The notes below the pieces were generated by a model, which was not told the origin of the DNA, did no database searches, and saw only the letters and a program-made list of their open reading frames with translations. This document shows positions 17,259-64,000 of a DNA stretch of 64,000 nucleotides, piece by piece (position 1 is the stretch's first letter; each line of letters begins with the position of its first letter). Location: assembly GCF_000150275.1 (NCBI RefSeq), contig NW_002060949.1:4577216-4641215 (forward strand). The letters run 5' to 3'. Origin of the DNA: Trichoplax adhaerens (Eukaryota > Animalia > Placozoa). The translations under genes were made by a program, and so were the position numbers.

Positions 17259-17320
17259 GAGTGCTAAAAGAAATTCTTTTAGGATCTCTATTGAAGCTTT
17301 ATAACTGAGATGAGCCATGG

Positions 17321-17640
17321 ACTACTACTGTAGAAAAAGGCCTTGCTCTAGTAGTCCAGGTAGAGTACTGTATAGTACAGTACAGTATTGCAGTCCAGAT
17401 AGAGTACCGTACTGTACAGTACAGTATCTGTGACGTCATTCGCGTTGAAGCCTACAGTACTGTACAGTACAGTGTACAGTGTACAATACAGTAAAATGTT
17501 CGTACTTACTACTGTAGAAAAAGGCCTTGCCTACAGTACAGTACAGTACAGTACTGTAGTAGTCCAGATAGAGTAGAGTACAGTAGAGTACAGTACAGTA
17601 CAGTATCTGTGACGTCATTCACTTTGAAGCCTACAGTACA
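17321..17640. promoter_or_regulatory. Putative caspase A promoter: two related ~140-bp repeats (~180 bp period), each with TACAG arrays and a perfect CRE palindrome TGACGTCA (17431-17438, 17610-17617)
   Basis: Repeat units tactactgtagaaaaaggccttgc...cagtatctgtgacgtcattc....tgaagcctacagtac lie 230-550 bp upstream of the ATG at 17867. Confidence 0.55.
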
Positions 17641-17866: not shown

Positions 17867-20800
17867 ATGGCTACGGTTGTAGGCCTAGCGAGAGAGGATC
17901 GCGATTTACTCCAGCATAATTACAATAATCTACTCAGCAACTTGCAGGCAAAAATTGATTTTGTCATTACTATTGCGTATACTAAGAAGTTAATCGATGG
18001 ATACGATAAAACTACTATTGAAGGAGAAAGTGATGCTTACAAGTAAGTACAGTACCATACTGTAGGTCATGATAAGCATAACATGAAACTGGATAGGATC
18101 GATGATGTTGAACGTAGTCATGTAGTTTTACACTGTTGCTATCTTGTTCAAATCTTGTGTTTCTCTCACTCTCTCTTCTCTTGTTACTGTCAAATGAATC
18201 AGCAAAAATACCGTATTAATACTGTTGGTTATAGTGGTCTACTTTTTACTTTCTATTCGATAAAAGTCTTTGAACTGGATCGACGGTAGTGTGAACGCTG
18301 TATTGATTATTTGCAACTTTATTGTCATTTTTAGTCAGTTTCCGTAGCGTTCAATAACACATACTGTAGCTGACATGCTTGATATTGACACTTAATTTTG
18401 AAATAAACATCCATTTTCAACTTAATATTTTGGGAAATTTCTCAACATACTGTACAGTACTTTATTGCACTGTGCTGTAAAAGCAATAACTCTACTACGG
18501 TACTGTACAGTACATTAATCTACACAACAGTACGACAGTATATTGAAATTGATCAAACTCGTTTACTTTCTATTTTGGTATGTGAACGTACATCAACAGT
18601 TATTCTTATTTAGGTAAGTATTAAAGCAGGATAAAAAACATGAAAGACAGTACAGTACATGCTTTTTTTTTAGCAGTACACCAGTAATACTGCCGCACTG
18701 TGCCTCGTACGTTAGTTTTAGTTTTTTTTTGATACAAATGTACAATCTTACGCAATAGCTATTACTGATGCCGTATTGCTAACATCAGTCTGTAAAAGTA
18801 GACATACTCGTACGTATTCGAAGAAGAAAGGTAATAACAGCATCAATCTTCATCAACGCACTGTATCTCATACGATAGTTTTATCATCTTACAATGCAGC
18901 TCAAACTGATACATTAGTCTGCAAAAGTAGATATACAGTAAATATTTGGACAAGCAAAGGGAAAAATGACATCGATGCTTATCAACACAGTACTATGTAA
19001 TAATACCCTACTGAACTACCTTACTGGATCTCATAGCTTACCTTTATGATACAGATTGATAATCTTACGATACAACTATTACTTATACTACTAAGATCAA
19101 TCTGGAAGAAATAGCCATTCAACTTGAAGACTAGCTGTTCGATTTTTGAAGTTGAATAATAAGAATACAGTAGTATATCTAGGTGTCTAAACAGTATAGT
19201 ACAGTGCAGATACGTCAAAATATTACGAGTGAGATGTTATACTTGTTCTGCCAGAAAAAGTAAAGACTGGGCTAATGTCTATCAATACGGTATCGCACTG
19301 TAGACTCGTATGTTAGTTTGATCATACAGATTGATAATTAATCTTACGATGCGGCTACTACTTACTGTGCTCTGCTAAGATAACTCCGGAACAAGTAGAC
19401 ATACACGCACTTGTTCTAAGAGGAAAAAGTTTAAACTACATCAACGGTGATCAACCCTATTTTAGAAAAACGCGTAAATTCTTGGATATCGTACCTTCTC
19501 GCGGATCGAAAGCTTTAGAATTACTATTGGAAGTAATTGATGAAACGGTAAACCCAGCTGTCAGCAAGGATATACGAGACCAGAGGAAGGCTAAACAACA
19601 GTCGCTTAAGCCAGGTAAACAGCAGTTAGACAATTTTAATGGTATAAAAATGCATCTAATTACTTTATTCCTCTGATTTTGTAAACAAGTGAGAAGATTA
19701 CAAAATTTAAGGCGATATCATGAATAAATAATTTGTAGGCTTACCTACTACAGTATACTACCTATAGCAACACATAGATACGAATACAATCCATTAACAG
19801 GAAAGATGGCAGTATTATACTATAAAGTATAGTACAGTACAGTACAGGACATACCTCAGTACAATCAAAATCGACCTACCCCGTTTCTCACAATAGCAAA
19901 ATATTGATATTAGACAATAAATATATCGACTATATTATTAGTTTCTAATTTTAAATATTGTCTCATTTTAACCTAACTAATGTAAATGAGGTATTATTAT
20001 CTTGTTACATATTGCAGCAAATCGTAAAGTGACTCCGAGATCAACAAATGAATCAGATTCTTCTACAGTTTCTACAGCTGAAAGCGAACAAACTTCAACC
20101 ATGGAAATAGGTATGAGAATAGCTACTATGCTGTGAGTTCATTGTAGATTATTGTAAACTGTATAAACTGTAGATTGGCAGGTATATAACGTAGAGCATA
20201 AGAGAAATCTTATCACAGCGATCTATGCGTTATTTTGTGTCACTAGTTAAAATTTTAACAAATATTGATTCAACTCTACTACTACATTTATAGAAATTAC
20301 TATAATATTAATACGTATCCAATTTCGAAATCGTCCTTGATTGGTGTTATTGGAGATCATTTTGGGGCATTCCAAACTAAAGTATTCAATTCTGTAAATT
20401 ACTATTGCATTTCTAGTTGATCCTGAAAGTGGCGGTGGTACGATATCACTATATGATGATTTTGATTCTGCACCGATAAGAAGAAGTCCTATTCTTAGTG
20501 AACAATATTTGTATAAGATGGAAAATAAGCCGCTTGGCTATGCTTTGATTATCAATAATAGGTTAATGATCTACGGTGATACGTTAGGTGTCATATTTTT
20601 TGTATTTATAAACTATCAATCATTAACCGTATACAATTTTATCTCTTTATCTTGTTAATAACTAGAAAATTCATTGGGATGCCTGAACGTAAAGGTAGCG
20701 ATAGAGACGCTAAAGGTATGCAAACTCTATTGGTAAATCTAGGCTACAAAGTAGCAATAGGCGACGATTTGAGTGCAGCTCAAATGAAAGATGTATTACA

Positions 20801-21401
20801 ACGATGGGCCGCCAAGGATCATAGTACTTGTGATAGCTTCGTATGCGTGTTATTAAGCCATGGCGAGCAAGGTAAAATATTTGGCACTGATACCGACGTG
20901 GATATCGAAGAATTACTTGGACTGTTTAGAGGTAATCGTTGCGCTTCACTGGCTGGAAAGCCAAAGTTATTTTTTATTCAAGCTTGTCGTGGTACAAACT
21001 TTGATGAAGCTGTCGATCACATTGACGGCGTTCCTGATGAATCAGCACTAAATGCAGAAGGTTATGAGGATGAAGTTGATGCTAAAACTCGACAAACATT
21101 ACCATCTGAAGCAGATTTTTTAATTGCCTATTCGGTTGTTCCAGGTTATTATTCTTGGAGAAATTCTACAAATGGCTCTTGGTTTATGCAAGCAGTTATT
21201 GACATTTTTACTAAATATTATAAGCAACTGGATCTTATAACAATGTTAACTATTGTTAATAATTCAGTTGCAACGGTCGAATCTTCAACAAGTGATCCGA
21301 GATTCAATAATAAAAAGCAGATCCCTAGCTGTGTTAACATGCTACGTAAGCTAGTCTACTTTAATTCAGAAGCAGTCAAAAATCACGGTATTTTTGGTTA
21401 A
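17867..21401 (+). CDS. Caspase A: N-terminal CARD + caspase-3/7-type catalytic domain (exons 17867-18042, 19466-19614, 20018-20110, 20417-20561, 20666-21401)
   Basis: CARD-like MATVVGLAREDRDLLQHNYNNLL...KTRKFLDIVPSRGSKALELLLEVI; YKMENKPLGYALIINN; LLSHG; GKPKLFFIQACRG; PGYYSWRNSTNGSWF; KKQIP. Splice phases match. Confidence 0.92.
18690..19460. repeat. About four degenerate repeat units in caspase A intron 1
   Basis: The motif (cgc)actg...ctc.ta...tagttt...atcttac...aagtaga.atac recurs near 18695, 18857, 19023 and 19294. Confidence 0.55.
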
Positions 21402-23046
21402 GTACAAACTGTTAACCTAGAGAATAACTATAGAAGATTGTGATTCTATACTTTTATTCGATGTACTACATTTACACGAATCCTTGACTAGTACTGTAGA
21501 ACTATAACCTTAAAACAGTATCCCTTTTTTACTAGCAGTATCTGTGATTATAATCGGAAATTTTTATCTATTGTTATGTAATCTTTGTAATGCGTTAGAC
21601 TAACATTTTCTATTAAGCTTTTAATATCTATCTTCAACGTAAATATTGGAATTGTGTTTTGTAAGTTCATTTCATGGTTGTACTGAAAAGAAATGTTTTT
21701 ATGCAGCGGTAATCTAAACTACTGTTTATTTGGCTTACATCTATAAACCCAGCTGATGACTTATAGATAGTTCCTCACTTACCTATTTCTGATGAAACCG
21801 TTTCAATAAAGTATACCTCCATGGTGAAGTATACGCGTACAGTAGTTAGACAATATGCAAATATACGTTAAGCATAATATTAGATATTGAACCCGGTATA
21901 TTAACTTTAATAATTTTTATAACAACTTCCTAAACTTAAACGTTTAAACCTCCTTATCGTTAATCATTAGAATGTTGTCATTAAGTAATTCCTATTGGAA
22001 TTCCAAAATCGTTCAATAATTGCAGTAATTATGCCAATTATTTAGACTATCGACTAATAAAGTTTTACAAATCTAATTTTAAATTCATTATTAGTTTTCT
22101 AGATACATTGAAGCTATCAATTCTGTAGATTATGTTTCTATAGTTCAATTAAAGATACTCTTTCTCTTTTAACTTAAATGTCTAAATCTTTGGTTAGGTG
22201 TCTATAATCTTTGCAGTTTATTACTAATTTATATGAGTTAAAAGATCGTGTAATAAAGTATGAACTATGGATTATAATAATTATTGAGATTTGTCAACTA
22301 ATAAAGCCTACTGTTAGGCATAAACGCAGTGCATTGATTGTTATTATTCTAGCTCGTCTACGTAAACGTAAATTCTGTTTGATGACGCTACCTTACGTTA
22401 CTATGCATTCCTTGAAATACTCTAAAGACTGTCACCTTCCTACTACTTTATATTGCTACCATTGATAAATTGACAAATAAAAGCGCTGTACTACAAGATT
22501 AGCAGATTTGAAGCACGTCTACATAGGACAGATTTGGATGATATTGTGGTTTAAGCACAAGGCCGTTGACCATATATTGTGTGAGAAGAAACAGTAGTTC
22601 AGCGCAAAAGAAAGAAAGAGTTATTAAAGTTTTATGAAATTTTATTGCAGCATTTCATTCTCTGTTTAATTAAAAATCCTCTTTATTCAAAGAAATATTA
22701 TAAAAATAGAAGAGGTAAAAATTCTCTAATGCAGTATGTTAATGCATGTAGTAATTATCATTCTGGAAATTGATTTTAGATCCTTAGCTAAGATAGTACG
22801 ATAACTATAAATCTGAAATGATGTTAAAGGTAAAAACTTTAATTTACGTTGTAGGCCAGCTCGTCTTCTATATAGGAATGAATGTTCATTGTAATACAAT
22901 ACGAGTCCAGTAAAGTATATTAAAACACTCCAACTTACAAACTTTCAATTTACGTTGGACGTCAGTTCGTTTCTATGTGAACGAATTTTTACTCCACTAT
23001 TCAAGCAAATAGTAATCTTCTTTTACTATTATCATTTGTGAATACG

Positions 23047-25982
23047 TTAGTTACTGTATGCTCCAGAATTTCTGGCAGCTTCGATTGAAAAAAAAAGATC
23101 TCGACGAAGTCTAGATACAATAGAAGGGATTTGTTTTTTGCCTCGATACATTAAATTATTAGATTGAGATTCTTTTTGAGCAACAAAACAACACACTCTT
23201 GTTAACATTCTCAATAAATCCATGTGTTGGTGATATTGTTCAAAGACTTCAACAACAGCCTGGATGAACCAAGAACCTGCACTATTTCGCCAGGCAAAAT
23301 AACCGGGGGCCGTAGCATATGCAAGTAAGAAATCGCCCTCAGATGGAAGAGTACTACCAACAAAATCAGTCACGTCTTCTTCCTCCGTTTCCTTACTAAG
23401 CGTAGAATCAGGTACATCTGCACCTGAATCAAAATTTTGACCACGACACGCCTGTATAAGTTTGTAAAATGGTATTCGTTAAGATAGCGGTATATGAGTG
23501 TTATGTAATACAATCATTTTAAACAAGAGGAGGTATTTTCAATGCAATCTATCATTACAGTAACGACATGAATATATAATTATAACGATGGAGTTATATC
23601 TATTACAGTAAAAACCTGAATAAAAAATATTTTTGGTTTTCCTGCAAGGGATCTACATTTATCTCCACGAAATTTTGCAAACATCTCTTCTAGATTTACT
23701 TTACCATCCTTTCCATAGATGAAATCGTGTTCCCCGTGACTAAGAAATGCACATGCGAAGCTATCGTAATTTCGATGATCTTTTTTGCTATAATCACTTA
23801 ATTTAGCTACAATTTTTTGAACTGTAAAGTTATCGCATCTATCCACGATATAATTTAGTCTTTTAAAAAGACTCTCGAGTTTATCAGCATCAACCGCACT
23901 TCCATCTCTAGCGTTCATCCCTGTCTGTTGTGAAAATTTTCTAAAATTTTTACAACGAAAACGATATTAGTACCCATTTAACTAATGATACATTTTATTA
24001 GTATACGTCTAATAAAAATGTAGGTACAGTATAATAGATGCATTAGGTGCTCTATAGTGTACATTTAAATTGGGATCGAAAGTGAAATATCAAAATAGTA
24101 AAATTTAATTTGTTTAATACGAAGCTTACTCCTGATTGAATATCACCATGTATCCATGAGGTTTCTTACTCATTTCATAGATTAAATTGTCCGTTTTTAA
24201 AGTATATTTTGCAGTAATTGGTACTTTCTTGATATCGAGAGGCGGATAAATGGAATCGATCTCTTCACCAACTACATGTATCAAGCAATATTAATGAACG
24301 CTTATTAAGGATCCTTCTGAAATCGATTAAATACCTACAATGTTTACTCATATTGTATATACTCTCATTTTAGACTTATTTATAATTCATTAGCATAAAA
24401 TATAATAAAACAAAATGCAATTTTACAAACCTGTAACGGACTGTACATCAACATCTATTTCTTTAGGTAACAGGAGCAGTGTTAACGGTATAAATATGTG
24501 ACATACATATATACATGATTAGAATGACAATGATAAAGTTATTGTAATTATTGTTAAATTTTAGATCGATACTGATAAAATTTAAAATTTAATGAGCTAT
24601 GAAAACATAAAAATTAGTTATTATATAAAGATATGAAATTGCTACCAGGTTGTTTTTCGCTAGTTGGCTCTATAATATATTGAATTGAAAACAAAAGCTA
24701 TGTGTTAATATAAAGTCGAAATATCCTTGCAAGTATGTACGCGTACATGAAAGACTAAGTAAATGCTTTATCAGACTTTGCCATAATACGAGTATATGTA
24801 TACAGGGTAAAGAAAATATTAATCAAGCAACTGTTTTGCTTGAAATACTGCACTTAAAACAGTATATAAAGATTCTTTCATTAAACACTTGAGAAACTAT
24901 GATTTAATCAACCCTGGCCTGATAGCGGTGATAACTAGCAAAATCACTTGGACTAGCATTAGATGGTAAGTGTAACCTAAATAAACTGTGCTCCGTCAAT
25001 TACTGTACTGTACTGTACTGTACATTACTGAACGTGCCTGTAGTGGATCGATTTCCCTGTGACCGTAAATGAGCGGATAATTCAGGATTGATATCAGCCA
25101 GAGCATCGCAAAATTTTCCGAAAGCTTGACTTCCACATGTTTTAATTTGCGTCAACAGTTCATCCACTTTTCTATGAATACAAAATTGCAGAATTATTAC
25201 GCTGTACTCTAAAGTTGATTGTATTAGAACTCCAATCAGACTACCAAGACTTCAATGCTCATCAACTTCGATGAGTTCAATTTACAGCATTTTTCAAGAT
25301 TGCTTTATACCATCAATTATATTACCATACGTTTACCGAGTAGTGATATCCTCATTTGGCTAACTACTGCACCTTGTACTAGAGTACGTTTGCACGATTG
25401 CATTTTGCTGTGTTGGTAAAATACGTAGACAAACAAGCAGATTTTAGTTCAGTCTTTGATTGTGATCCGTATACAAAATGCTCCATGCGTGATTATTTAT
25501 CTCCCACTCCACTATTATTTACCATGTTCATCTTTATTTCAGATATTTTAATGCAAATGTATATCAAAGTTATCGCTGTGTTCTAAAACATGTTTTATGT
25601 CTATGTCATACAGTCAGTATACAGTTGCAGTACAGTTTTATGTTAGTATAAAACGCTCTATTTGTGCGTTAGCTTTAATTCCATTTTTCCTTTTTTTTAT
25701 ACCTGAAATAAGTATCAACACGTTGTACTCTTTTGATGATACGAATGGTAACTTGTTCTACAACATGCACCTTGCGCGAATAGTTAAAATAGAATCGACA
25801 TACCGAAAGTGAGATCTTTGATTTCGAAGCGCGATTATAGAGTAATCATCCAAGACTTTATTGGCAAATAACCTATCACATAATTGTTCAACTTGCTCTG
25901 ATGACAAGTTGTTTTGGATGTTGATTAAGTTCTCTCGCAGCACATCTCGATGTTCTTGCGACATTCCAATAACTTTCGCCAT
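23047..25982 (-). CDS. Caspase B: N-terminal CARD + caspase-3/7-type catalytic domain (~8 exons; small linker exons at 24430-24980 uncertain)
   Basis: Exon 1 MAKVIGMSQEHRDVLRENL...LCDRLFANKVLD (25982-25804); KVDELLTQIKTCGSQAFGKFCDAL; YEMSKKPHGYMVIFNQ; FLSHGE; GKPKIFFIQ|ACRG (intron between Q and A); APGYFAWRNSAGSWFIQ; KKQIPSIVSRLRRDLFF. Confidence 0.9.
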
Positions 25983-27508
25983 TTTTACTTTCAGTTCTGC
26001 CCGTTTGAGATTTTTAATGTCTGGCTTCTTTTGCCTTTTGCCGCGATAGATGTCAAATGTGAAAAGTTAAGCAGAAAAGATAGCAAATTGCTAAGGTTTA
26101 GTATGGTACCGTACGGTTTATATAGGCCATACTACTGGACTACACTACTGTTAGTAATTCATGAATCAGGATACTCTATAGTATTATTATTAGACTGATA
26201 ATATAATTATAGTAAGAGACTATAATGCCCCAATGCAATTCTACGCAATACTATACTGTTATTAAAACGTACCATATGTGGCATACTGTAGTGAAAAGGA
26301 CAAGTAAAACTAGAATATCGTAGCATTTACAATCGGTTAAATGATGGACTTAGCAAAATATTGCTAAAAATTGGATCTTAACCATCACGATGGGCTACTG
26401 GAAATTACTACCAGTAATTAACCCTTTTATTTTCGAATGGTTCATGGCCTAACTCATACTTTCTAGCCTAGGGCTCTTGCTTCATGATTTAGCTATTTCT
26501 TATAGTGGTCTTTCAACATTCTGCATCACCTGCAGTGCCAAACTACAGCTTGTATATTAATAGCTAGGCTGATTACTAATTAGATATAAATTATTACTAG
26601 CCATTTTGCTGGCTGTTTCCTCTGTCTTTACAGCTAGTGATTTGGTCATCTTGTAAGGTACAGCCTATCACTCACACAATATCCTCTTACATCTTCTGAT
26701 TGCATGATATAAGCATTGATAATATAATTAACTAATGAGTAGACCCTAATATCAACAAATGGATATCATTACTTAATGTACATAGGCATGACCTGATAGA
26801 ATAAGAATAATTAGAAGGCTTTCTCTGATCTTATTTTCCATCTGCAATTTCACCCATACTCCTCTCTTCTAACTGTAACTGCAGAGTGTTATTTTACTTG
26901 CGTTTAGATTACTATTTTGTTGTTTTGTAGAAATTTACCAGAAATGTTATCAAGGTAAAAGTGCACCGAAATATTAGTCGAGATACTGATACATACTAAA
27001 CACATTCTACAGCACGTGTATAGCACTGTAATATCGAAAATAAAGTTAGGTAAATGGCTGGCTAATCAGGGACTGCAGCACTCCGCCCCAAAATTAGTGT
27101 AAACATGAAAACTCCTCTCCCCCGTACAAAATTTCTTCATATTGTAGTGGATTATATGTAAGTCCACATACCATAAATCGCTCCGATCTGTGTTCTACTA
27201 GATGAAAAGGTTACTTTTAATGTAGAGTATGTGTAAAATAGTGTTGATTCCATGAAGAAACCAAAGTGTAAAGTAGAGTAGAATATTTGCAATAATTAGA
27301 ATGTCAATAAAACATGACAACCTGCAGGACAGCAGTATGATGATGGAACAAGGAGAAACTTGCTGCCAGTTACAGTACAAGCTACACTAGCAGCTACCCA
27401 GACATGTGACAGCTACATATAGTACTGTACTGTATTGCACTCGGCTCCTCTTCCTTCCAGTAGTCCCTCTAAATACTTAGCAGATTATGGCCTATCTCCT
27501 GTAAGGTC

Positions 27509-28852
27509 ATGGACTACTCGGTTTCAGCTTCAAACATGGAAATAGGTACGAGAATAGCAACTATGCTGTTAGTTCATTGTAGATTATTATAAACTGTAGA
27601 TTGGCAGGTAGAGCACAAGAAATCAAGAGAGATCTTATCACAGGGATCTATGCGTTAGTCGATGTCACTAGCTTCAAAATTGAACATATATATTAATTCA
27701 AATTTTATACTCTGTCTTCAACTCTACTACTGCATTTATAGAAATTATTATTATAATATTAATACGTATCCAATTTCGAAATCGTCTTTGATTGATGTTA
27801 TTGAAGATCATTTTGGGGCATTTCAAATTAAAGTATTCAATTCTGTAAATTACTATTGCATTTCTAGTTGATCCTGAAAGTGGCGGTGGTGCCATATCAC
27901 TATATTATGATGATCTTCATTCTGCGCCGATAAGAGGCCCTATCCTGAGTGAACAATATTTGTATAAGATGGGAAACAAGCCGCATGGCTATGCTTTGAT
28001 TATCAATAATAGGTTAATGATCTACGGTGATACGTTAGGTGTCGTATTTTTTGTATTTATAAACTATCAATCATTAACCGTATACAATTTTATCTCTTTA
28101 TCTTGTTAATAACTAGAAAATTCATTGGGATGCCTGAACGTAAAGGTAGCGATAAAGATGCTGAAGGTATGCAAACTCTATTGGTAAAACTAGGCTACAA
28201 AGTAGCAATGGGCAACAATTTGAGTGCAGCTCAAATGAAAGATGTATTACAACGATGGGCCGCCAGGGATCATAGTACTTGTGATAGCTTCGTATGCGTG
28301 TTATTAAGCCATGGCGAGCAAGGTAAAATATTTGGCACTGATACCGACGTGGATATCGAAGAATTACTTGGACTGTTTAGAGGTAATCGTTGCGCTTCAC
28401 TGGCTGGAAAGCCAAAGTTATTTTTTATTCAAGCTTGTCGTGGTACAAACTTTGATGAAGCTGTCGACAACGTTGACGGCGTTCCTAATGAATCAGCACT
28501 AAATGCAGAAGGTTATGAGGATGAAGTTGATGCTAAAACTCGACAAACATTACCATCTGAAGCAGATTTTTTAATTGCCTATTCGGTTGTTCCAGGTTAT
28601 TATTCTTGGAGAAATTCTACAAATGGCTCTTGGTTTATGCAAGCAGTTATTGACATTTTTACTAAATATTATAAGCAACTGGATCTTATAACAATGTTAA
28701 CTATTGTTAATAATTCAGTTGCAACGGTCGAATCTTCAACAAGTGATCCGAGATTCAATAATAAAAAGCAGATCCCTAGCTGTGTTAACATGCTACGTAA
28801 GCTAGTCTACTTTAATTCAGAAGCAGTCAAAAATCACGGTATTTTTGGTTAA
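27509..28852 (+). CDS. Caspase A': CARD-less duplicate of caspase A (exons 27509/27536-27545, 27868-28012, 28117-28852), intact frame
   Basis: Homology to caspase A starts only at cttcaa.catggaaatag (27529 vs 20093). In-frame ATGs at 27509 (MDYSVSASNMEI) and 27536. Both introns keep GT-AG, and SHG and QACRG are intact. Confidence 0.78.
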
Positions 28853-30865
28853 GTACAAACTGTTAACCTAGAGAATAACTATAGAAGATTGTGATTCTAT
28901 ACTTTTATTCGATGTACTACATTTACACGAATCCTTGACTAGTACTGTAGAACTATAACCTTAAAACAGTATCCCTTTTTACTAGCAGTATCTGTGATTA
29001 TAATCGGAAATTTTTATCTATTGTTATGTAATCTTTGTAATGCGTTAGACTAACATTTTCTATTAAGCTTTTAATATCTATCTTCAACGTAAATATTGGA
29101 ATTATGTTTGTAAGTTCATTTCATGGTTGTACTGAAAAGAAATGTTTTTATGCAGCGGTAATCTAAACTACTGTTTATTTGGCTTACATCTATAAACCCG
29201 GCTGATGACTTATAGATAGTTCCTCACTTACCCATTTCTGATGAAACCGTTTTAATAAAGTATACCTCCATGGCGAGGTATACGCGTACAGTAGTTGGAC
29301 AATATACGAATATACGTTAAGCATAATATTAGATATTGAACCCGGTATATTAACTTTAATAATTTTTAACAACTTCCTAAACTTAAACGTTTAAACCTCC
29401 TTATCGTTAATCATTAGAATGTTGTCATTAAGTAATTCCTATTGGAATTCCAAAATCGTTCAATAATTGCAGTAATTATGCCAATTATTTAGACTATCGA
29501 CTAATAAAGTTTTACAAATCTAATTTTAAATTCATTATTAGTTTTCTAGATACATTGAAGCTATCAATTCTGTAGACTATGTTTCTATAGTTCAGTTGAA
29601 GATACTCTTTCTCTTTTAACTTACATGTCTAAATCTTTGGTTAGGTGTCTATAATCTTTGCAGTTTATTACTAATTTATATGAGTTAAAAGATCGTGTAA
29701 TAAAGTATGAACTATGGATTATAATAATTATTGAGATTTGTCAACTAATAAAGCCTACTGTTAGGCATAAACGCAGTGCATTGATTGTTATTATTCTAGC
29801 TCGTCGACGTAAACGTACATTCTGAGTGTGTCCATTTTTGTTTCAGATACTTGTATATGGGAATTATTGCTATATTCTATAACATGTTTTATATATACGC
29901 TCGTACAGTTGCAGTAGAGTTTACGTTGGCATAAAATACTATATTTGTGCGTTAGCTTTAGTTCTATTTTTTCCATTTTTTATAGTTGAAACAAATATGA
30001 ACACGTAGTACTCTTTCGATCACACGAACGATAACTTGTTCTACAACATGCACCTTGCATGAATAGGTAAAAATACAATCAATATACCGAAAGTGAATTT
30101 GTGAGTTCGAAGCGAGCTTATAGAGTGTTGATCCAAGACTATCGGAAAATAGCACGTCGAATAATTGCTCAAGTTAGTCTACTGACAAGTTCTTTTGGAT
30201 GTTGACTAAGTTTCTTGCAGTACGACTTGATGCTCTTTCGACATTCCAATAATTTTCGCCATCTTTACAGTTAGTTCAGCCCGTTTGAGATTTAATGTCT
30301 AGGTTCTTCTTTTGCTACGTTGGAATTCGAATGTGGAAAGTTAAGTACGATACAAATGTTAGCGAATAAAGTCGAAATAGGAACCGTAAGATCATAACGA
30401 AAAGCGCTTAAAATTTGACAGTGCTCAGATCAGTTTCATTAACAAATACTGATACAGGCTAATCACGATTTTTGTAATACTGTTTTCCAGTCGACTCTAG
30501 TATACCTACGGTATGATAGTTCATTCATTATCTTACAACGTGGATGCTATTGCTGTGCATCGTATGTACTCATTCATGCGTACAGCATAACATCAACGAA
30601 TAGATATCATTACTTAATGTGCATAGGCATGACCTGATAGAATAGGAATAATTAGAAGGCTTTCTCTAATCTTATTTTCCATCTTCAATTTCACCCATAA
30701 TACTACCTTCTAACTGTAATCGTAAAACGTTGTCTTACTATTTTGCTGTGTTGTAGAAATTTACTAGAAATCATTATCAAGGCAAAAGTGTACCAATATA
30801 TTAGTGGAGATACTGATCCATACTAAATAGATTGTATAATACTATAATATGGAAAATAAAGTTAC
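27529..30865. repeat. Tandem segmental duplicate of 20093-27047 with internal deletions
   Basis: 27529-29818 corresponds to 20093-22372; 29833-30345 corresponds to 25530-26072; 30592-30865 corresponds to 26751-27047. Confidence 0.9.
30088..30262 (-). pseudogene. Caspase B' pseudogene: only CARD exon 1 retained, frameshifted
   Basis: MAKIIGMSKEHQVVLQE is followed by a 1-nt deletion (GAA-AC-TTA vs GAG-AAC-TTA), and there is a TAA in the ancestral frame. All catalytic exons are deleted. Confidence 0.85.
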
Positions 30866-31331
30866 GTACGTGTACGTAGATTGTACTTTGGTACTCCAAT
30901 GTTGGCTACAAAATTTCAAGTAAATTACTTTAATGGATTGTACTAAATTTTTCAATTAATCATTGGTCAACAGACCAATGCATTTCTACGAATTATTTCA
31001 TTATCCATAAACAATTGCATTAAGCAATAATCTTTCTAACAGAGACGTCTTATAAATGCGTTAAATCTTTTATTTCAATTCTGTTTGGGAGTATGAACAT
31101 CTCCAATGATTAATAACAGGTCATAACATTCAGCCTGTTCTGGTCTAGTTGTAAAAATTAAACTATGCCAACATCCGCATTCACCTGGGTAATACCTTAC
31201 ACAGCAGCAAAGAGAGTAGCACGTAAGGGTTGCGGACGATAACGAATCGCAGAATGTTTGCATGTACAGTATGTCGTCGGTTAATTGAAAATATCTCATA
31301 AGTAAAATATGTAGCCGCCTTTGGTGTATTC

Positions 31332-34201
31332 TTAATTTGAAATGTATTCTTTATTAATACTTCTTCCGATCAATAGACGTCTGATTTCGCTAGTACCAGC
31401 ACCAATTTCATAAAGCTTAGCATCTCGCAAAATGCGACCAGTTGGATAATCGTTAATATAACCATTCCCACCTATAGCGCAATTGCAGATCGAGAATTTT
31501 AACACGACAATCTATTTTAAAATAGCTCTCTTGACTCATTTACTTATTTTATTAGCTTACCAAGAAGTTGTAGAGCATCAAGTGCAACTTTAGTAGCGGC
31601 TTCGGCACAATACAGAATCACACCAGCACAATCCTGCAACGAGATACAAATAAGATCTTAAAAGTCACATCGAGAACAATATTACAGAAATAGAAAAGAA
31701 TATAAAAGTAGAGCAGGTTATTAGGGAAATGAAGTTATCTTAAGAAGCATACCCTGCTGACGATTCGACCTGCATCACAAGCTCTGGCAACGTTGTATAA
31801 ATAACTTCTACAGGAATTAAGTTTTACGTACATGTCCGCCATCTTTGCTTGTATTAGCTGCGGGAGATTAGAAGCACGAGCAGTTTGAGATCCGATATTA
31901 TATATATACAATAACTCTACAGTCACTCATTAGATCGTGATATTGACCAGTGCTGATTAAATAAATGAATCCTATACAGAGCTTTATATAGGATCGTTTT
32001 ATTTTTGATCTTCTGTGAACTTTACGTAAGGTCTAAATCTATTTCAAATAATCAACAGTACTTTATACTAAAGATTATCATCTATTAATTTAATAAATCA
32101 CGAAGTCACCTTTACCACAGTAATAAAATGCATTATCACGTATTAGTATAGTAAGTAGCATAATATAGTAGTACAGTATAACGTTAAGCTTTTTTATTAC
32201 CTGAAATTGAGCTATTTTTGTATTAAATTGTTCACGCTGATGAACATAAGGATAGGCAACATCAACTGCAGCCTGCATCAAACCTACAGGTCCAGCAGCA
32301 AGGACCAAACGTTCTAAATCCAATCCACTCATTAATACGTAAACTCCTGTCAAAATGATAGTACAAAATGGATTTTAGACATTCGTCAAAACTTAGCTTT
32401 TGACTATATCGCAATTCAATCATTATAATTCATTGCAGTTTACCTTTTCCAGATCCTCCCATAATTTGCGATTCATGTACTTTACAGTCTTCAAATATTA
32501 GTTCGCAAGTATTTGAACCTCTCATTCCCAACTTATCTAACTTTGGGGCTGTTGAAAATCCTGGCATATTCTATAACATCAATTTGTGTTATTATAATAG
32601 TACAATATGTACAACACAACGCAAAATAACAAAAAATTTATCAAGGATACAAGATCCCATACACTACTGAGAATTTATACTTTTTCTATGAGAAAAGTGG
32701 TTATTCCGCGCTGTTTTGCGGATGGATCGGTTTTAGCATAAACCACCAATACGTCAGCATCCGGCCCGTTGGTAATCCAGAATTTACTTCCGTTTAGGAT
32801 ATAATAATCCCCTATTGGATGAATGTACAAGTTATGTTCACAAATCTTTCAAACAGAACAGTTTTTAGCAAGTTCGATCGATATTGAAAAACGAATTCTT
32901 ATATCGGTGCTAAAGCATGGCATTAACGATGTTACAGAATGAAGAGAGTTAGTATGTCTCACCCTTTTTTTCTGCTTTCAGACGCATAGAAACAACATCG
33001 CTACCCGATCCAGATTCACTCATTGCCAACGCTCCAATGTATTCCCCGCTAATGAGCTAGCAATTGTACTGTATGTTATTATTCTTGAGTTTAAACAGAT
33101 TACTTAATACTCGAAATGTAAATTTTAAGTGCTTTAAAGTCGTACAACTATACGTAGAAGAGTATAGGGATTTGATCATTTATTTTTTACTTCATGAATT
33201 GTTGCGATCGATACCTTAGGGAGATACTTTGCTTTTTGTTCATCCGTCCCATTCCTCACCACCTGATTAACACATAGATTAGAGTGAGCACCATAGCTAA
33301 GTGCAATACTGCCACTGCCACGGCTGATTTCTTCCAATGCAATACAATGATGGAGGAAAGTGCCAGCCGTACCACCGAATTCTGCTGGTGCGGTGATACC
33401 TAGTAAGCCCATATTGCCAAGCTTTTTCCAAAATTCTCGAATTTGTGAGAAATTATTGTTGCTATCTATTTCCTGTGCATATGGAGCCAGCTCTTCATTG
33501 ACAAACTTGCGTATTGCACTTCTTAACTGTCAACAGCATAGTAATTATTCGGAATCAAAACGAATAAAAGTAGTAATAATTAATATTACCAATTGATTAT
33601 AATCTCAATACTTTTTTTATTATTATTTTTTAGGTAACGTTCTTTTATTTGTGTTTAGTCTGAAAGTTGCAATATGTGTAGTCAAGTAGAATTTGAAATG
33701 AAATCTTCCAATCAGTAATAGTAATAATACTGTCTTTTATTTGTGCTTAGTTTAAAAGTTGTAGAGTCAAAATGAAGTCAAAATTTGAAATCTTTAAATC
33801 ATTTCAACCAGCTGTCAGCACATCAATCAACGTCAACCCATTCAACTGTTTACGATACTGTACGCTACTGTACAGTGTACAGTAGCGTTGCAGGCTTGCT
33901 TTCGTAAAACTCTTTGAAACATCGATTTGAGAATTGGAGGCGGTAGCTTCTTAATTTTAACTTCAACAGGATCTATCCGATGTACGGACCTCCTGTTGCC
34001 TTGTCCATAAATACCTAGGTGAGATCACATCGTATCTTCCTCTTGCCAGTCTCAAACGCGATGTCTCAAACAAGTCTTTACATTCACGCTTTACCGAGCT
34101 ATGCTCAAAGTAGCACCAAGTTGATCCCGACCTAGTACAAGATCAAATCTGATAGCGATGTATGGAGATTCATAGAGTAATGGTTGAAACTCTTCATTCA
34201 T
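31332..34201 (-). CDS. IVD: Isovaleryl-CoA dehydrogenase, canonical paralog (5' exon uncertain)
   Basis: [37 protein letters not shown]; [12 protein letters not shown]; [19 protein letters not shown]; [15 protein letters not shown]; [19 protein letters not shown]; [17 protein letters not shown] (catalytic Glu); [33 protein letters not shown]. Confidence 0.93.
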
Positions 34202-34636
34202 ATTACTAATAGTAACCAATGCTTGATTTTTGTTCTTGCGATCAACTATCAGTATTTGTTTGTAAATTCGATTGCAACTGAGGATACGCGTAAGCAAGTA
34301 TGGCTGCACACTCTACGTACAGTAAACCGAGTGTAGCCAGTCTGCACACTATGCCTAGTGCTTCTTCTAAGTACAACGACTATGTCAAAATAGTAGGCCA
34401 TTCTTTAGTGTTTTACCTCTTTTTCTTCATCTTGAAGGCCATAGAGATCATCGTCGACAGGAAACGCGGCAGCACAATACTTCCTATTAGCCACTGTTGG
34501 TCTTACGATGCCATGAAGTAATTTCGAGAAGGTCACTGATCGACGGCCGACGATCGAGGACATCTTGACTACCAGCTGGTGTTAAAATAAGAAGTGACGG
34601 CTTGCACTGGCTGACTTATCATTGCGAAATCCCTAG

Positions 34637-34850
34637 TGTACACTGTACAGTACAGTGTCCAGTACGTCTGTCTATCCAGATAGTGTAGTGTAGCGCTAGT
34701 ATACCTGACGTGCTAGTCACTCTGCAATACCGTACACCGAGTGTACAGTGTACAGTACAGTACATGGAGTGAGTACACTGTACTGTACAGTACTGTACTG
34801 TACTGTAGGTGTCTGTCGGACTTTGGAACTACAGTACAGTACATATAAAA
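34637..34850. promoter_or_regulatory. TACAG/CTGTA palindromic arrays in the divergent intergenic region between the IVD paralogs (putative bidirectional promoter)
   Basis: gtgtacactgtacagtacagtg and gtgtacagtgtacagtacagtac...cactgtactgtacagtactgtactgtactgtag lie between the two 5' ends. Confidence 0.45.
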
Positions 34851-35132
34851 GTCCATGCTGTGATACCAAAATATGGACGAGTTTTAGTAGTCTACAGTAT
34901 GACCAGACTGCGTTGCAGGAATTTCTTTCTTGTTCATACGGTACTGTAGTACCTGACCCTGTGACCTCGCATATACTGTACAATGTACATGCGAAGTAGG
35001 TTACTGCAGTGGGATTCTCCTGTATCGATGTATCCATAGTAAGATACTGTACTACAAGCTTAAACGAGCTGATCAACTTTTACTCACTGGCTAATTATTC
35101 AGTAGCTGCAACCAGCGCTAGGAATCGCCAGG

Positions 35133-38100
35133 ATGCATCGCATGATCTCGAAATATGTCAATCGACCTCTTTTCAGTCGATCCTTTATCCAACGTTATTA
35201 TCTGAGTAATGTAGCTCAAGTTGATGATGCCTTATTTCACCCGACTGAAGAAGAAAAGCAGGTACTTCAAGTTATATGCATACAATGTGTCGTAAGCTGC
35301 GCGTGCTATCATTCCGTAGTAACTTCTTTAGGGCAATCCAAAAGTATATGGGTCTATTTTATACCGTTCATATAATACAATCATGAGAGATTATTCCTTC
35401 ATGTCATTTTATGATACGAGCAATGATGAAATGTGAAGTTACAATTCCAGTTATAGCAACAATACAGTAGATCAGTTACATTCTTCGCCGTATCCTACAA
35501 CCGTAAAGTAAACTACAGATGTTTACGTACCATGTATGGACGTGCGTATGTTATGACGTAGACGATAGGTGTTACTTGCTGGAAATATTGGAGAAATACC
35601 GAAACCTAAACTTGTCAAGATCGCTTTCATGCAATTAAAATAGATATGTCATGACATATATACAGTATAGAACTATATACTTATTGACTATACTGAACAT
35701 GGCTGAAGAGCGTACTGTTCGGTATGTCCACATAGGATACAGTAACTCAATCAGTTCAATTTTGTGACGGTAGTCAATTCTCTGGAACAACTTACTCTCA
35801 ATAATACGTACACGCAAGTTTTGAAAATTTTACAATTTATTCAACGTGATCGATCAGCGGTAATGGTGATTTATTTTAGTTAAGTTACAGCTTACCCTAC
35901 AGTCATACGTTTTACGTCAAAAAGCGTAATTGAATTGTGCAATATAGGTAGAAGATATAGCATGTTAGATCAGTGTATCGGATCACTATATTCACATGCT
36001 TTCTTTGAGGAAGCTTTGGAGATCTGAATAAGTACTACACCTTACTGTACACTGTATAACTTGGGTATGAAGTCGTTCTGATGTGCATATCATACTCGTA
36101 TAGCTTCGACAAACTATTTTCAAATTCGCCCAAGAAGAGCTAGCCCCTTATGCGGCTGAAATCGATGCTAAGGATGAATTTACAGAATTACGATCGTTCT
36201 GGAGGAAGTTAGGAGACATGGGTTTACATGGGATTACAGTACCAGAGAGTGAAGGTGGTGCTGGAGGAAGCTATATGGACCATTGTATTACAATTGAAGA
36301 GCTAGCAAGGGCTTCCCCATCAGTTGGTATGAGCTACGCTGTCCACTCTAATATGTGCATTAATCAGTTGGTCCGAAATGGAAATGCAGAACAAAAAGCC
36401 AAATATCTTCCCAAGGTACTGTCAGCATTTCTTACTAAAATAGTATATGGCCTATTTCTCTGATAATTATAATCAATACTACTATGCAAGTTTGATATAG
36501 GCAATCAGTCATTGTGCTGTCAATTTTATTCTATACCATCTCATATCTTATTATTATGTTTGCTTTGTTTCTGTTGACATCAAATATTCCACTACTAAAG
36601 CTGATAAGTGGTGAATATATCGGTGCTTTGGCAATGAGCGAACCAAATGCTGGTAGCGATGTCATGTCCTTGAGACTTCGCGCGGAAAAACAAGGTTAGT
36701 ACGTTGTGTTGCTCCTATGCTTACTAACCAATTGCATCCGCAATGCTTGGATTGCAACACATGAGTTAGGATTTATTCACCATAAAGGTTAATACAGTTG
36801 TACATAAAACATGATGCGATCAATACATTTTTACGAAATATCCTTTCTACTGTTATCAATATGTATCAAATAGAAGAATGGTAAATGAACTTGATTGATA
36901 TTTTCACAATTTTCTTCACTTTAGGGAATCACTACGTTCTAAATGGAACTAAATTCTGGATTACCAATGGGCCTGTTGCAGATATTATCATAGTTTATGC
37001 TAAAACTGATCCTGCTGCTCACCAACATGGAATATCGGCATTTATAGTCGAAACGGTACGCAATCATTAGTCGTGAAATAAAATTAGCCTTGGCTAAGTG
37101 ATTACTTAAACAGATATAGCTATTGATAGCCTAACACCATTTCCGGTATATGTTACGTAGAAAACACCTGGATTTTCGATCGCACAGAAATTAGATAAAC
37201 TAGGTTTAAGAGGCTCAGAAACTGGCGAATTAGTATTTGAAGATTGCAAAATTCCTGAAGAAAATATTTTAGGGCGTGTAAATAAAGGTTACTTTGATAT
37301 ATTATATACAAGATATTTTGATGAGAATAAAGTTGATTAATACGATAATCCTTTCCCTAGGAGTTCAAGTCCTGATGAGTGGACTTGATTTGGAAAGAGG
37401 AACACTGGCAGGCGGTGCTATTGGCATAATGCAGTCGGTTGTTGACGTTGTCTACCCATACGTTCATACGAGGGAACAATTTGATCAGAAAATTGGTCAA
37501 TTTCAGGTAGAATGACCACCTCGCTTGGATTTAAGTTATTTTTCAAGGCGAATTGATCAGACTACTGTCACAGTCAATTCCTGCACAAGATTTTTTTTTA
37601 ATGTATAGTCGTGTGAATTAAAAGGAATTTTTTGATTTCACTTAATTATTCCATCTCGATGATCATAATCGTACCGTGTTTAAAATTTTTGTTTTCCTTT
37701 CAGATGATTCAGTCCAAATTGGCCGATATGTATAACACCTTAAACCTGTGTCGTAGTTATCTGTATAATGTTGTCCGAGCATTTGATAGAGGTGTTATTA
37801 GAAGCGCAGTGAGTATAGCTATATAACTTAAAATGAACTGTACTTCTGCGTATCCCTGTAAGGTGTAAAGATTACTTAACAATAATATCTTGTTTACTTT
37901 ATTAAGTTGCTTCTTTCAAATTTATGATCCTAAATCTATCAAAATCAATAATGATCCGATTTAATAGGATTGTGCAGCAGCAGGAATTCTGGTTGGAGAA
38001 AATGCTACACAAATGGCTTTAGATGGTATTCAATGTTTAGGTACGTCTGGTCTTTAGAATAGTGAGCTACCATTGTAGTATACAATACAACTTGTAAATT

Positions 38101-62784: not shown

Positions 62785-62834
62785 NNNNNNNNNNNNNNNN
62801 NNNNNNNNNNNNNNNNNNNNNNNNNNNNNNNNNN
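62785..62834. other. Assembly gap (50 N)
   Basis: Run of N. Confidence 1.
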
Positions 62835-62835
62835 C

Positions 62836-64000
62836 ATGGAAATAGGTATGAGAATAGCTACTATGCTGTGAGTTCATTGTAGATTATTGTAAACTGTATA
62901 AACTGTAGATTGGCAGGTATATAACGTAGAGCATAAGAGAAATCTTATCACAGCGATCTATGCGTTATTTTGTGTCACTAGTTAAAATTTTAACAAATAT
63001 TGATTCAACTCTACTACTACATTTATAGAAATTACTATAATATTAATACGTATCCAATTTCGAAATCGTCCTTGATTGGTGTTATTGGAGATCATTTTGG
63101 GGCATTCCAAACTAAAGTATTCAATTCTGTAAATTACTATTGCATTTCTAGTTGATCCTGAAAGTGGCGGTGGTACGATATCACTATATGATGATTTTGA
63201 TTCTGCACCGATAAGAAGAAGTCCTATTCTTAGTGAACAATATTTGTATAAGATGGAAAATAAGCCGCTTGGCTATGCTTTGATTATCAATAATAGGTTA
63301 ATGATCTACGGTGATACGTTAGGTGTCATATTTTTTGTATTTATAAACTATCAATCATTAACCGTATACAATTTTATCTCTTTATCTTGTTAATAACTAG
63401 AAAATTCATTGGGATGCCTGAACGTAAAGGTAGCGATAGAGACGCTGAAGGTATGCAAACTCTATTGGTAAAACTAGGCTACAAAGTAGCAATGGGCAAC
63501 GATTTGAGTGCAGCTACAATGAAAGATGTATTACAACGATGGGCCGCCAAGGATCATAGTGCTTGTGATAGCTTCGTATGCGTGTTATTAAGCCATGGCG
63601 AGCAAGGTAAAATATTTGGCACTGATACCGACGTGGATATCGAAGAATTACTTGGACTGTTTAGAGGTAATCGTTGCGCTTCACTGGCTGGAAAGCCAAA
63701 GTTATTTTTTATTCAAGCTTGTCGTGGTACAAACTTTGATGAAGCTGTCGATCACGTTGACGGCGTTCCTGATGAATCAGCACTAAATACAGAAGGTTAT
63801 GAGGATGAAGTTGATGCTAAAACTCGGCAAACATTACCATCTGAAGCAGATTTTTTAATTGCCTATTCGGTTGTTCCAGGTTATTATTCTTGGAGAAATT
63901 CTACAAATGGTTCTTGGTTTATGCAAGCAGTTATTGACATTTTTACTAAATATTATAAGCAACTGGATCTTATAACAATGTTAACTATTGTTAATAATTC
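62836..64000 (+). CDS. Caspase A'': third copy of the caspase A catalytic region (62836-62845, 63152-63296, 63401->64000), truncated by the gap and the window end
   Basis: Near-identical to 20101-21265, including introns; SHG and QACRG are intact. Confidence 0.75.

What the first reader, a model, noticed from the sequence alone, without database searches (positions are those of the whole stretch)
27400..28852. Birth of a short-prodomain 'executioner' caspase by partial duplication
Seen: the duplicate begins a few nt before an internal Met of caspase A exon 3, so both CARD exons are excluded. New flanking DNA supplies an in-frame ATG (MDYSVSASN-MEI), a good-context aaacATGg and a short TACAG-type motif at ~27420. 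The next exon has compensating +3/-3 indels (still 145 nt) and mostly amino-acid-changing differences, including loss of the now unnecessary prodomain cleavage site (DDFD|S -> DDLHS). The linker DxxD and DEVD sites and the catalytic dyad are retained. Inference: an initiator/executioner pair arising de novo at one locus, with CARD-caspases A/B activating CARD-less A'. Together with the dead B' CARD exon, this looks like a caspase system caught while diversifying.
Basis: partly seen in the sequence, partly recalled or inferred. Interest (0 to 1): 0.8.

Follow-up and report, generated by a model that had tools for sequence, protein, structure and literature searches.

The report
CARD-less caspase copy from partial duplication
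In the placozoan Trichoplax, an old tandem duplication copied only the protease-coding half of a CARD-caspase gene, leaving an intact caspase-3/7-like gene with no recruitment domain that gene conversion keeps nearly identical to its parent; whether it is expressed or acts as an executioner is untested.

Summary
A copy of CARD-caspase gene A (17867-21401) starts at 27528, matching A from 20093, 8 nt before an internal Met codon. Nothing upstream is homologous, so both CARD exons are excluded. The copy (A') has three exons, intact splice sites, an open frame of 305 or 296 codons, the catalytic dyad and the linker Asp sites. The same junction occurs in the independently assembled Trichoplax sp. 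H2 genome, where A' is annotated as a separate 296-aa gene, so it is not an assembly artefact.

- **Age:** the duplication is not new. It was a ~7.4-kb tandem unit (3' half of A, neighbour B, intergenic DNA). The B' remnant is 21-23% diverged and frameshifted.
- **Gene conversion:** A/A' divergence falls in steps from 10% to 4.5% to 1.5%, which points to repeated conversion.
- **Selection:** the excess of amino-acid changes is also seen in neighbouring genes between H1 and H2.
- **Function:** A' has only three copy-specific protease-domain changes shared by H1 and H2, no expression evidence is within reach of these tools, and another locus may already encode a short-prodomain caspase.

The third copy at 62835-64000 is a 1.2-kb orphan contig, probably an allele of A.

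The parts
20093..22377 (+). Parental segment of CARD-caspase gene A that was copied: last 18 nt of exon 3, intron 3, exon 4, intron 4, exon 5 and 3' flank
   Evidence: Self-BLAST at 95% identity to 27528-29824; per-feature identities
27053..27527 (+). Unique DNA upstream of the junction. It supplies the new ATG (27509), a 5-codon upstream ORF (27487, H1 only), an (ACAGT)n motif at 27371-27446 and a polypyrimidine-AG at 27440-27460. It is the candidate 5'UTR and promoter, and lies head-to-head with gene B
   Evidence: Single copy in the genome. No homology to A upstream or to the region after 30868. Conserved in H2 apart from a 22-bp indel
27509..27545 (+). A' first coding exon (MDYSVSASNMEI, phase 1). 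Nucleotides 27528-27545 are inherited from A exon 3; the alternative start is the ATG at 27536
   Evidence: Read from the sequence; the H2 gene model starts at the MEI ATG (P0001)
27868..28012 (+). A' exon homologous to A exon 4, 145 nt, with +3/-3 indels; DDFD|S is replaced by YYDDLHS
   Evidence: 12 substitutions, 6 synonymous and 6 nonsynonymous
28117..28852 (+). A' last exon: whole Peptidase_C14 domain with SHG, QACRG, DNVD|G, DEVD|A and the stop codon
   Evidence: Pfam PF00656 E=2.4e-64; 98.4% identical to A exon 5
28853..29824 (+). Duplicated 3' flank of A', 98-99% identical to 21402-22377
29829..30345 (-). B' remnant: dead copy of the B CARD exon and its surroundings, 77% identical to 25525-26071, with frameshifts and a stop. 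The B catalytic exons (22378-25524 equivalent) are deleted
30576..30868 (.). Last recognisable piece of the second duplication unit, 79% identical to 26735-27052
62835..64000 (+). A'': 1,166-bp contig between two assembly gaps, 99% identical to A 20100-21265. Its exon-5 residues match the H2 allele of A. Probably an allelic contig rather than a third gene
   Evidence: proteins P0003 and P0121

Best explanation
A' is a genuine CARD-less paralogue of CARD-caspase A.

Shown:
- An old tandem duplication copied a ~7.4-kb unit: the 3' part of A from the middle of exon 3, the convergent neighbour B, and the DNA upstream of B. The second unit was placed directly after the first.
- The left breakpoint fell 8 nt upstream of an internal Met codon. 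The copy therefore kept a usable start codon and the whole caspase-3/7-like protease, and lost both CARD exons.
- In the second unit B' decayed: its catalytic exons are deleted and its CARD exon is frameshifted. A' stayed open.
- A and A' have exchanged sequence by gene conversion several times. Exon 5 and the 3' flank now differ by only about the allelic level (1.2-1.9%). Intron 3 and most of exon 4 differ by 10%, and the B/B' part by 21-23%.

Inferred:
- A' is transcribed from the DNA it now shares head-to-head with B and makes a 296- or 305-residue zymogen the size of procaspase-3 (odds about 0.6).
- Its linker sites are essentially those of A, and its protease domain is about 97% identical to A's. 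Active A could therefore cleave it, and it should pair with A protomers as readily as with itself.
For: - Junction and colinear blocks.
- Same junction, gene order (A 432 aa with CARD, B 407 aa with CARD, A' 296 aa, IVD, IVD) and open frame in the de novo H2 assembly, which carries its own SNPs and a 22-bp indel.
- Domains: the H2 orthologue of A (P0121) has CARD plus Peptidase_C14; the H2 orthologue of A' (P0001) has Peptidase_C14 only.
- Nearest solved relatives of A' are caspase-3 and caspase-7 (E 1e-69 to 1e-60). The alignment to full-length caspase-3 starts at residue 21, so the N-terminal peptide has the length of a caspase-3 prodomain.
- Mosaic divergence: noncoding intron 3 at 88.9% identity against intron 4 plus 3' flank at 98.5% (Fisher p=2.6e-12). 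In the converted part, paralogue distances are no larger than H1-H2 distances.
- B' is dead, while A' kept its frame, its splice sites and two in-frame indels through 10% divergence. Exon 4 has dN/dS 0.24, P=0.027 against neutrality.
- A more distant placozoan (contigs L008/L009) has the CARD-bearing A orthologue with the A-type exon 4 (DDFD kept). CARD-A is therefore ancestral and the A' states are derived. dS to that lineage is about 1.1, so the duplication is younger than that split.
Against: - No transcript data could be reached. The H2 MAKER model may rest on protein homology, and the JGI H1 models are partial.
- Gene conversion from A could keep a silent copy looking intact.
- Exon 4 substitution density (10.1%) equals that of the adjacent intron (11.1%), and the selection signal rests on 12 substitutions.
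- The protease domain shows no A'-specific change at functional positions, so nothing marks it as specialised.
- In corals, CARD-bearing caspase-3/7-like enzymes behave as weakly dimeric initiators and do not directly activate the short-prodomain caspases (PMC7586219). Removing a CARD from such a domain need not give an executioner.
- The 475 bp upstream of the junction has no counterpart at the end of the second unit, so a simple tandem model needs an extra deletion.
Confidence: 0.6

Rival explanations
1. A' is a transcriptionally silent or non-functional gene fragment. Repeated gene conversion from the functional parent A refreshes its exon 5, so it looks intact without being under selection of its own.
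For: - Exon 5 and the 3' flank are at allelic-level divergence from A, with no orthology signal.
- Variable codons in exon 5 are 14 nonsynonymous to 4 synonymous, the neutral ratio.
- Exon 4 substitution density equals that of the intron.
- The conserved DDFD motif is lost and differs again between H1 (YYDD) and H2 (DDDD).
- No transcript evidence was found, and the H1 copy has an upstream out-of-frame uORF.
Against: - The part not recently converted (exon 1', its donor, the acceptor and most of exon 4) is still intact after 10% divergence, whereas the adjacent B' is riddled with frameshifts.
- Both exon-4 indels are in frame, and exon 4 dN/dS is 0.24 (P=0.027).
- The neutral-looking ratio in exon 5 is shared by A itself and by neighbouring genes, so it does not single out A'.
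Confidence: 0.27
2. The A' exons are used as alternative 3' exons of gene A. Transcripts from the A promoter would splice exon 3 (phase 1) to 27868 and give a CARD-bearing isoform with a variant linker, not a CARD-less protein.
For: Splice phases are compatible by descent. A' has no demonstrated promoter of its own.
Against: - It would need read-through of A's own 3' end and a 7.8-kb intron spanning gene B on the other strand. A's own introns are 0.1-1.4 kb.
- H2 annotators modelled A' separately.
- A' keeps a start codon in good context and the donor site of exon 1'.
Confidence: 0.06
3. The copy is an assembly artefact: a mis-joined haplotype or a collapsed repeat in the Sanger assembly.
For: A 99%-identical fragment of A sits after an N gap at 62835, starting within 7 nt of the same breakpoint. 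That shows this assembly does misplace or fragment caspase sequence.
Against: - The H2 genome, assembled de novo from other reads, has the same junction and gene order with its own SNPs and indel.
- The A' 5' part is 10% diverged from A with five intron indels, far beyond allelic variation.
Confidence: 0.02

Closest known systems
Vertebrate executioner procaspases-3 and -7
   Same: They are the best sequence matches (E 1e-69 to 1e-60, about 50% identity). Shared features: size of 296-305 aa, an N-terminal peptide of about 30-45 residues without CARD or DED, SHG and QACRG, GSWF, and DxxD sites in the intersubunit linker including a literal DEVD.
   Different: A' is not an orthologue of these proteins. 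It is a recent truncation of a CARD-caspase and is still about 97% identical to that parent. Its oligomeric state, activation and substrates are unknown. The motif at the position of the prodomain cleavage site (DDFD in A) is lost.
Coral CARD-bearing caspase-3/7-like enzymes (OfCasp3a, PaCasp7a) and their short-prodomain partners (Shrestha et al. 2020, PMC7586219)
   Same: Parents A and B have the same unusual build: a CARD on a caspase-3/7-like, DxxD-type protease. Corals also have short-prodomain caspases alongside them.
   Different: The coral short-prodomain caspases are distant paralogues with a different specificity (VxxDases) and are not directly activated by the CARD forms. Here the CARD-less form is a near-identical truncated copy of the CARD form.
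Primate CARD-only proteins CARD16/COP, CARD17/INCA and CARD18/ICEBERG next to CASP1 (from my own knowledge)
   Same: They are tandem partial duplications of a caspase gene that keep one module and sit beside the parent. The usual outcome is a regulator of the parent.
   Different: They are the mirror image: those copies keep the CARD and lose the protease, whereas A' keeps the protease and loses the CARD. The only CARD-only piece here (B') is dead.
C. elegans csp-2 and csp-3, partial caspase paralogues that restrain CED-3 (from my own knowledge)
   Same: A truncated caspase paralogue could act by pairing with the full-length enzyme rather than as a downstream protease.
   Different: Those proteins lack catalytic parts. 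A' retains the full catalytic machinery.

Membership tests
Caspase (peptidase C14A) | Significant match to the Peptidase_C14 profile over the whole p20/p10 domain | tested here: met
   Window 28103-28849: PF00656 E=2.4e-64, profile positions 10-233. H2 orthologue P0001: E=2.6e-69, positions 2-233
Caspase (peptidase C14A) | Catalytic His-Cys dyad (SHG, QACRG) and the S1-pocket motif region (SWRN...GSWF) | tested here: met
   Read directly in the exon-5 translation. Identical in A, A' and H2 A'
Executioner (caspase-3/6/7-type) caspase | Short prodomain with no CARD or DED | tested here: met
   No homology to the A CARD exons upstream of 27528. In-frame stops at 27461 and 27470. Pfam finds only Peptidase_C14 in P0001
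Executioner (caspase-3/6/7-type) caspase | Protease domain closest to caspase-3/7 | tested here: met
   The top 60 PDB sequence hits are all caspase-3 or -7, and the top named database hits are caspase-7/3-like. The CARD-bearing parent A shares this property
Executioner (caspase-3/6/7-type) caspase | Asp cleavage sites in the intersubunit linker | tested here: met
   DNVD|G (H1) or DHVD|G (H2), and DEVD|A. Cleavage itself was not tested
Executioner (caspase-3/6/7-type) caspase | Constitutive dimeric zymogen activated in trans by an initiator | not testable with these tools
   Needs size-exclusion and cleavage assays. Coral CARD-caspase-3/7-like domains are only weak dimers (PMC7586219)
Independent expressed gene | Own transcript with its own 5' end | not testable with these tools
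   Only gene models exist: H2 MAKER 296 aa, with evidence that may be protein homology. No transcript-derived protein appeared among the hits
Unprocessed pseudogene | Frameshifts, stops or lost splice sites | tested here: not met
   All three exons are open and GT/AG sites are intact in H1 and H2. The neighbouring B' does meet this feature
Tandem segmental duplication with concerted evolution | Colinear paralogous blocks, with divergence that changes stepwise along the block independently of coding status | tested here: met
   Blocks. Divergence strata of 21-23%, 10.4%, 4.5% and 1.2-1.9%. Fisher p=2.6e-12 on noncoding sites

The most novel reading that the evidence does not exclude
A' is an expressed CARD-less caspase driven by the upstream region it shares head-to-head with CARD-caspase B. 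It works as the trans-cleaved effector, or as the free dimer partner, of its own parent A, while gene conversion keeps enzyme and substrate matched. That would be a natural, datable example of an initiator-type caspase gene giving rise to an effector-type one by a single partial duplication.
Probability: 0.25. Interest if true: 0.65.

Novelty: new member of a known kind. Interest (0 to 1): 0.42.

Why it matters
How short-prodomain effector caspases arose from domain-bearing ancestors is usually inferred from deep, saturated phylogenies. Here the event can be read at nucleotide level in an early-branching animal: the breakpoint, the recruited start codon, the decay of the co-duplicated neighbour, and the conversion tracts that tie the copy to its parent.

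If A' is expressed, it offers a simple system for asking what removing a CARD does to an otherwise unchanged protease. Parent and copy are about 97% identical and could be compared side by side in vitro.

If A' is silent, it is a caution that gene conversion can keep a truncated copy looking like a gene. Either way, placozoan caspase counts should treat A, A' and the A'' contig with care.

Tried and rejected
- **Homology upstream of the junction.** By eye, SVSAS resembles TVSTAES. Local and anchored alignments were no better than shuffles, so this was rejected.
- **Remnants of the A CARD exons or introns in 25900-27560.** Only (ACAGT)n low-complexity matches were found.
- **A counterpart of 27053-27527 at the end of the second unit (30300-32500) or elsewhere in the genome.** None was found. 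The simple tandem model therefore needs an extra deletion, or filler DNA at the junction.
- **JGI metagenome scan with the H2 A' protein.** It returned only a 37%-identical non-placozoan caspase, so it says nothing about A' in other placozoans.
- **Literature.** Searches for Trichoplax caspase, CARD and prodomain, and for the H2 locus tags, found only the note that H2 has two neighbouring CARD-caspases (PMC6321704). Nothing on A' turned up.
- **Positive selection on A'.** Rejected as unsupported, because the nonsynonymous excess also appears in A and in neighbouring genes.
- **Sequence beyond 64000.** It reads N.
- **Steps not run.** Exons were searched one by one by reference, and the natural H2 protein P0001 served as the full-length proxy.
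Full report
**Source and setting**

The window lies on contig C1408 of a 105.6-Mb genome in 1,414 contigs. An earlier scan note names the genome as Trichoplax. The locus is 99% identical to Trichoplax sp. H2 contig NOWV01000022 (GCA_003344405.1). GC content is about 32% and the genes have spliceosomal introns.

**Anatomy of the locus**

- **Gene A** (plus strand) has five exons: 17867-18042, 19466-19614, 20018-20110, 20417-20561 and 20666-21401. Exon 2 matches Pfam CARD (E=3.5e-5) and exon 5 matches Peptidase_C14 (E=2.5e-63).
- **The H2 orthologue of A** (P0121, 432 aa) has CARD at residues 14-97 and the caspase domain at 180-419.
- **Gene B** (minus strand, 23047-25982) is a second CARD-caspase, 407 aa in H2.
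- Kamm et al. 2019 list exactly these two genes (TrispH2_002831 and TrispH2_002832) as the N-terminal-CARD caspases of H2 (PMC6321704).

Self-BLAST gives 20093-22377 matching 27528-29824 at 95%. The alignment starts 8 nt before the ATG of the Met in exon 3 (...STMEI). The 93 nt before it are 21.5% identical, and gapped alignments of the flanks do no better than shuffled sequence. Both CARD exons are therefore outside the copy.

The copy, A', reads as follows:
- ATG at 27509 (MDYSVSASN), in frame with the inherited ATG at 27536 (aaacATGg).
- Donor GT at 27546.
- Exon 27868-28012, 145 nt, carrying +TAT and -AAG relative to A.
- Exon 28117-28852, open, Peptidase_C14 E=2.4e-64.

In-frame stops at 27461 and 27470 exclude any longer N-terminal extension. 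The product is 305 residues from the first ATG or 296 from the second.

SHG, QACRG, SWRN...GSWF, DNVD|G and DEVD|A are all present. DDFD|S in A reads YYDDLHS in H1 A' and DDDDLHS in H2 A'.

Exons were handled one by one by reference, and the natural H2 protein P0001 (296 aa) was used wherever a full-length sequence was needed.

**Not an artefact**

The H2 genome was assembled de novo with MaSuRCA from its own reads (PMC6057997). It has the same order: A, B, A', IVD, IVD. It has the same junction at L007 9992|9993, with its own SNPs and a 22-bp indel just upstream of the ATG. H2 annotators called A' as a separate 296-aa gene starting at MEI.

**What was duplicated**

Three colinear blocks link the two units:

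| Unit 1 | Unit 2 | Identity |
|---|---|---|
| 20093-22377 | 27528-29824 | 95% |
| 25525-26071 | 29829-30345 | 77% |
| 26735-27052 | 30576-30868 | 79% |

The unit was therefore the 3' half of A, then B, then DNA upstream of B, repeated in tandem. The second copy starts where the first ends.

In the second unit the equivalent of 22378-25524, which holds all the B catalytic exons, is missing. The B' CARD exon carries 1-nt and 2-nt deletions and a stop.

The 475 bp before the junction (27053-27527) occur once in the genome. They have no counterpart after 30868. Either that part of the second unit was lost later, or filler DNA was inserted at the junction.

**Age and gene conversion**

Divergence between the two units falls into strata:

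| Segment (A coordinates) | A vs A' divergence |
|---|---|
| B / B' blocks | 21-23% |
| Intron 3 plus the first 119 nt of exon 4 | 10.4%, with five intron indels |
| 22378-22760 (kept only in H2 A') | 4.5% |
| 20536-22377 (end of exon 4, intron 4, exon 5, 1 kb of 3' flank) | 1.2-1.9% |

The contrast holds for noncoding DNA alone: intron 3 against intron 4 plus 3' flank gives Fisher p=2.6e-12.

In the 10% stratum, H1 and H2 copies pair as orthologues at 0.9%. In the 1.5% stratum, paralogue distances are no larger than H1-H2 distances, and individual variants are shared across copies.

This is the pattern of an old duplication followed by repeated gene conversion centred on exon 5. A more distant placozoan recovered from two ENA metagenome contigs (L008, L009; 82% protein identity) has the CARD-bearing A orthologue. 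Its exon 4 keeps the A states (T, DDFD, RR, E). dS to Trichoplax is about 1.1 with dN/dS 0.11.

CARD-A is therefore ancestral. The exon-4 changes in A' are derived. The duplication is younger than that split but far older than the H1/H2 allelic divergence.

**Is A' under selection?**

- **Exon 4** (not recently converted): 6 synonymous and 6 nonsynonymous substitutions plus two in-frame indels. dN/dS is 0.24, with P=0.027 against the neutral 3.7:1 expectation. Its splice sites are intact. However, its overall substitution density equals that of intron 3, and three of the five intron indels are also multiples of three. The signal is modest.
- **Exon 5**: 14 of 18 variable codons among the five sequences are nonsynonymous. 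That is the neutral ratio and is far from the long-term 0.11 (P=2e-5). The same pattern holds for A between H1 and H2 (9 nonsynonymous, 0 synonymous) and for neighbouring B and IVD exons (8 to 5).
- This fits the strong allelic variation that Kamm et al. 2018 report for these clonal, admixed lineages. It is not a mark of A' neofunctionalisation.
- Only three A'-specific amino-acid changes in the protease domain are shared by H1 and H2: R13K, K50R and D124N. All three are conservative.

**Function**

P0001 matches caspase-3 and caspase-7 best (E 1e-69 to 1e-60). It aligns to full-length caspase-3 from residue 21, so its N-terminal peptide is prodomain-sized.

Its linker sites are essentially those of A. 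Active A, which presumably processes its own linker, should therefore be able to cut A'. With about 97% identity, the two protease domains should pair with each other as readily as with themselves. Both points are inference.

Three points count against a simple executioner reading:
- The parent is itself caspase-3/7-like, so similarity to executioners is inherited rather than acquired.
- Coral CARD-caspase-3/7-like enzymes are weak dimers that act as initiators and do not directly activate the short-prodomain caspases (PMC7586219).
- Trichoplax has other caspase loci. One of them, on C1402, has an ORF starting MDSYDEKENS... 33 residues before the YTM motif. That suggests a short prodomain, but upstream exons were not excluded.

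No transcript evidence was within reach. The evidence given to MAKER included proteins as well as transcripts. No transcript-derived protein for A or A' appeared in the protein search.

A plausible source of transcription is the 1.5-kb region that A' shares head-to-head with B. It carries a small (ACAGT)n cluster. Larger clusters of this motif precede A and lie between the two divergent IVD genes. This is weak, correlative evidence.

**The third copy**

A'' (62835-64000) is a 1,166-bp contig between a 50-N gap and a long N run. The JGI model P0003 stops at 63998, which fits a real assembly gap there.

It is identical to A for 609 nt. After that it carries the residues of the H2 allele of A (E, K, M, N, T, A). 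H1 and H2 share alleles at most loci (PMC6057997), so A'' is most simply the second H1 allele of A placed in a scaffold gap. A real third copy hidden in the gap is not excluded.

**Verdict**

The sequence observation is confirmed, and an independent assembly also carries the junction. The evolutionary reading needs correction: this is an old tandem duplication kept similar by gene conversion, not a newborn gene. The functional reading of an executioner activated by A or B is plausible but untested.

The object is a new, undescribed member of a known kind: a short-prodomain caspase made by partial gene duplication. It is of moderate interest.

Noticed in passing
window 62785-64000: A'' is a 1,166-bp contig flanked by gaps. 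It is 100% identical to A over 20100-20708, then carries H2-A-like residues in exon 5, and it begins within 7 nt of the A' breakpoint. It is probably an allelic contig of A placed in a scaffold gap, though a hidden third copy is not excluded.
   Followed up: partly
L007 12294-12880 (H2) versus window 29641-29824: In H2 the A' 3' flank continues for 383 bp more of A-flank homology (A 22378-22760, 4.5% diverged). A 20-N gap follows, and then 184 bp are repeated. This suggests a structural polymorphism or a haplotype mix at the B' deletion, so the extent of the B' deletion may differ between haplotypes.
   Followed up: partly
window 20712-21021 and 20534: The A copy in the main H1 scaffold carries five amino-acid changes in exon 5 (E16K, K24N, M31I, N33D, V119I) and a sixth, H to L, in exon 4. 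All are absent from A'', H2 A and both A' copies. The more distant placozoan agrees with the other copies at four of the six sites (K24, M31, V119 and the exon-4 His) and is uninformative at the other two. No synonymous change accompanies them.
   Followed up: partly
window 27891-27985: Of the 12 exon-4 substitutions from A to A', 9 are AT to GC and none is GC to AT, in a 32% GC genome. The last 80 nt of the adjacent intron show six GC-to-AT changes. This may reflect GC-biased conversion at a tract edge, or selection on exon definition. It remains unexplained.
   Followed up: no
window 27487-27508: H1 has 22 bp between two ATGG repeats that are absent in H2. They create an out-of-frame five-codon upstream ORF (MAYLL) just before the A' start.
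   Followed up: no
window 27440-27460: A textbook polypyrimidine tract plus CAG lies 48 nt upstream of the A' ATG, so exon 1' could be an internal exon. Spliced from A exon 2 or 3 (phase 1), it would hit a stop after six codons and give a CARD-only product.
   Followed up: no
window 16742-17632, 34646-34941, 39937-40022, 27371-27446: Clusters of the (ACAGT)n pentanucleotide repeat lie upstream of A, between the divergent IVD genes, and in a short form upstream of A'. The repeat may be promoter-associated in this genome.
   Followed up: partly
G000 C1402:1308641-1316400 (L010, L012): Two further tandem caspase genes lie on the minus strand. The downstream one has an exon starting MDSYDEKENS... 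that looks like a short prodomain. C1412:5381549 and C1:35-412 hold another weak Peptidase_C14 match.
   Followed up: partly
L008 (ERZ27263980) and L009 (ERZ23499115): Two ENA metagenome contigs carry the CARD-caspase A orthologue of a different, unidentified placozoan lineage (82% protein identity in exon 5). They are useful as an outgroup.
   Followed up: yes
window 31353-38292: Two isovaleryl-CoA-dehydrogenase-like genes lie head-to-head as an old inverted duplication (70-78% DNA identity in exons). Another scan note (s1-744569) covers the plus-strand copy.
   Followed up: no
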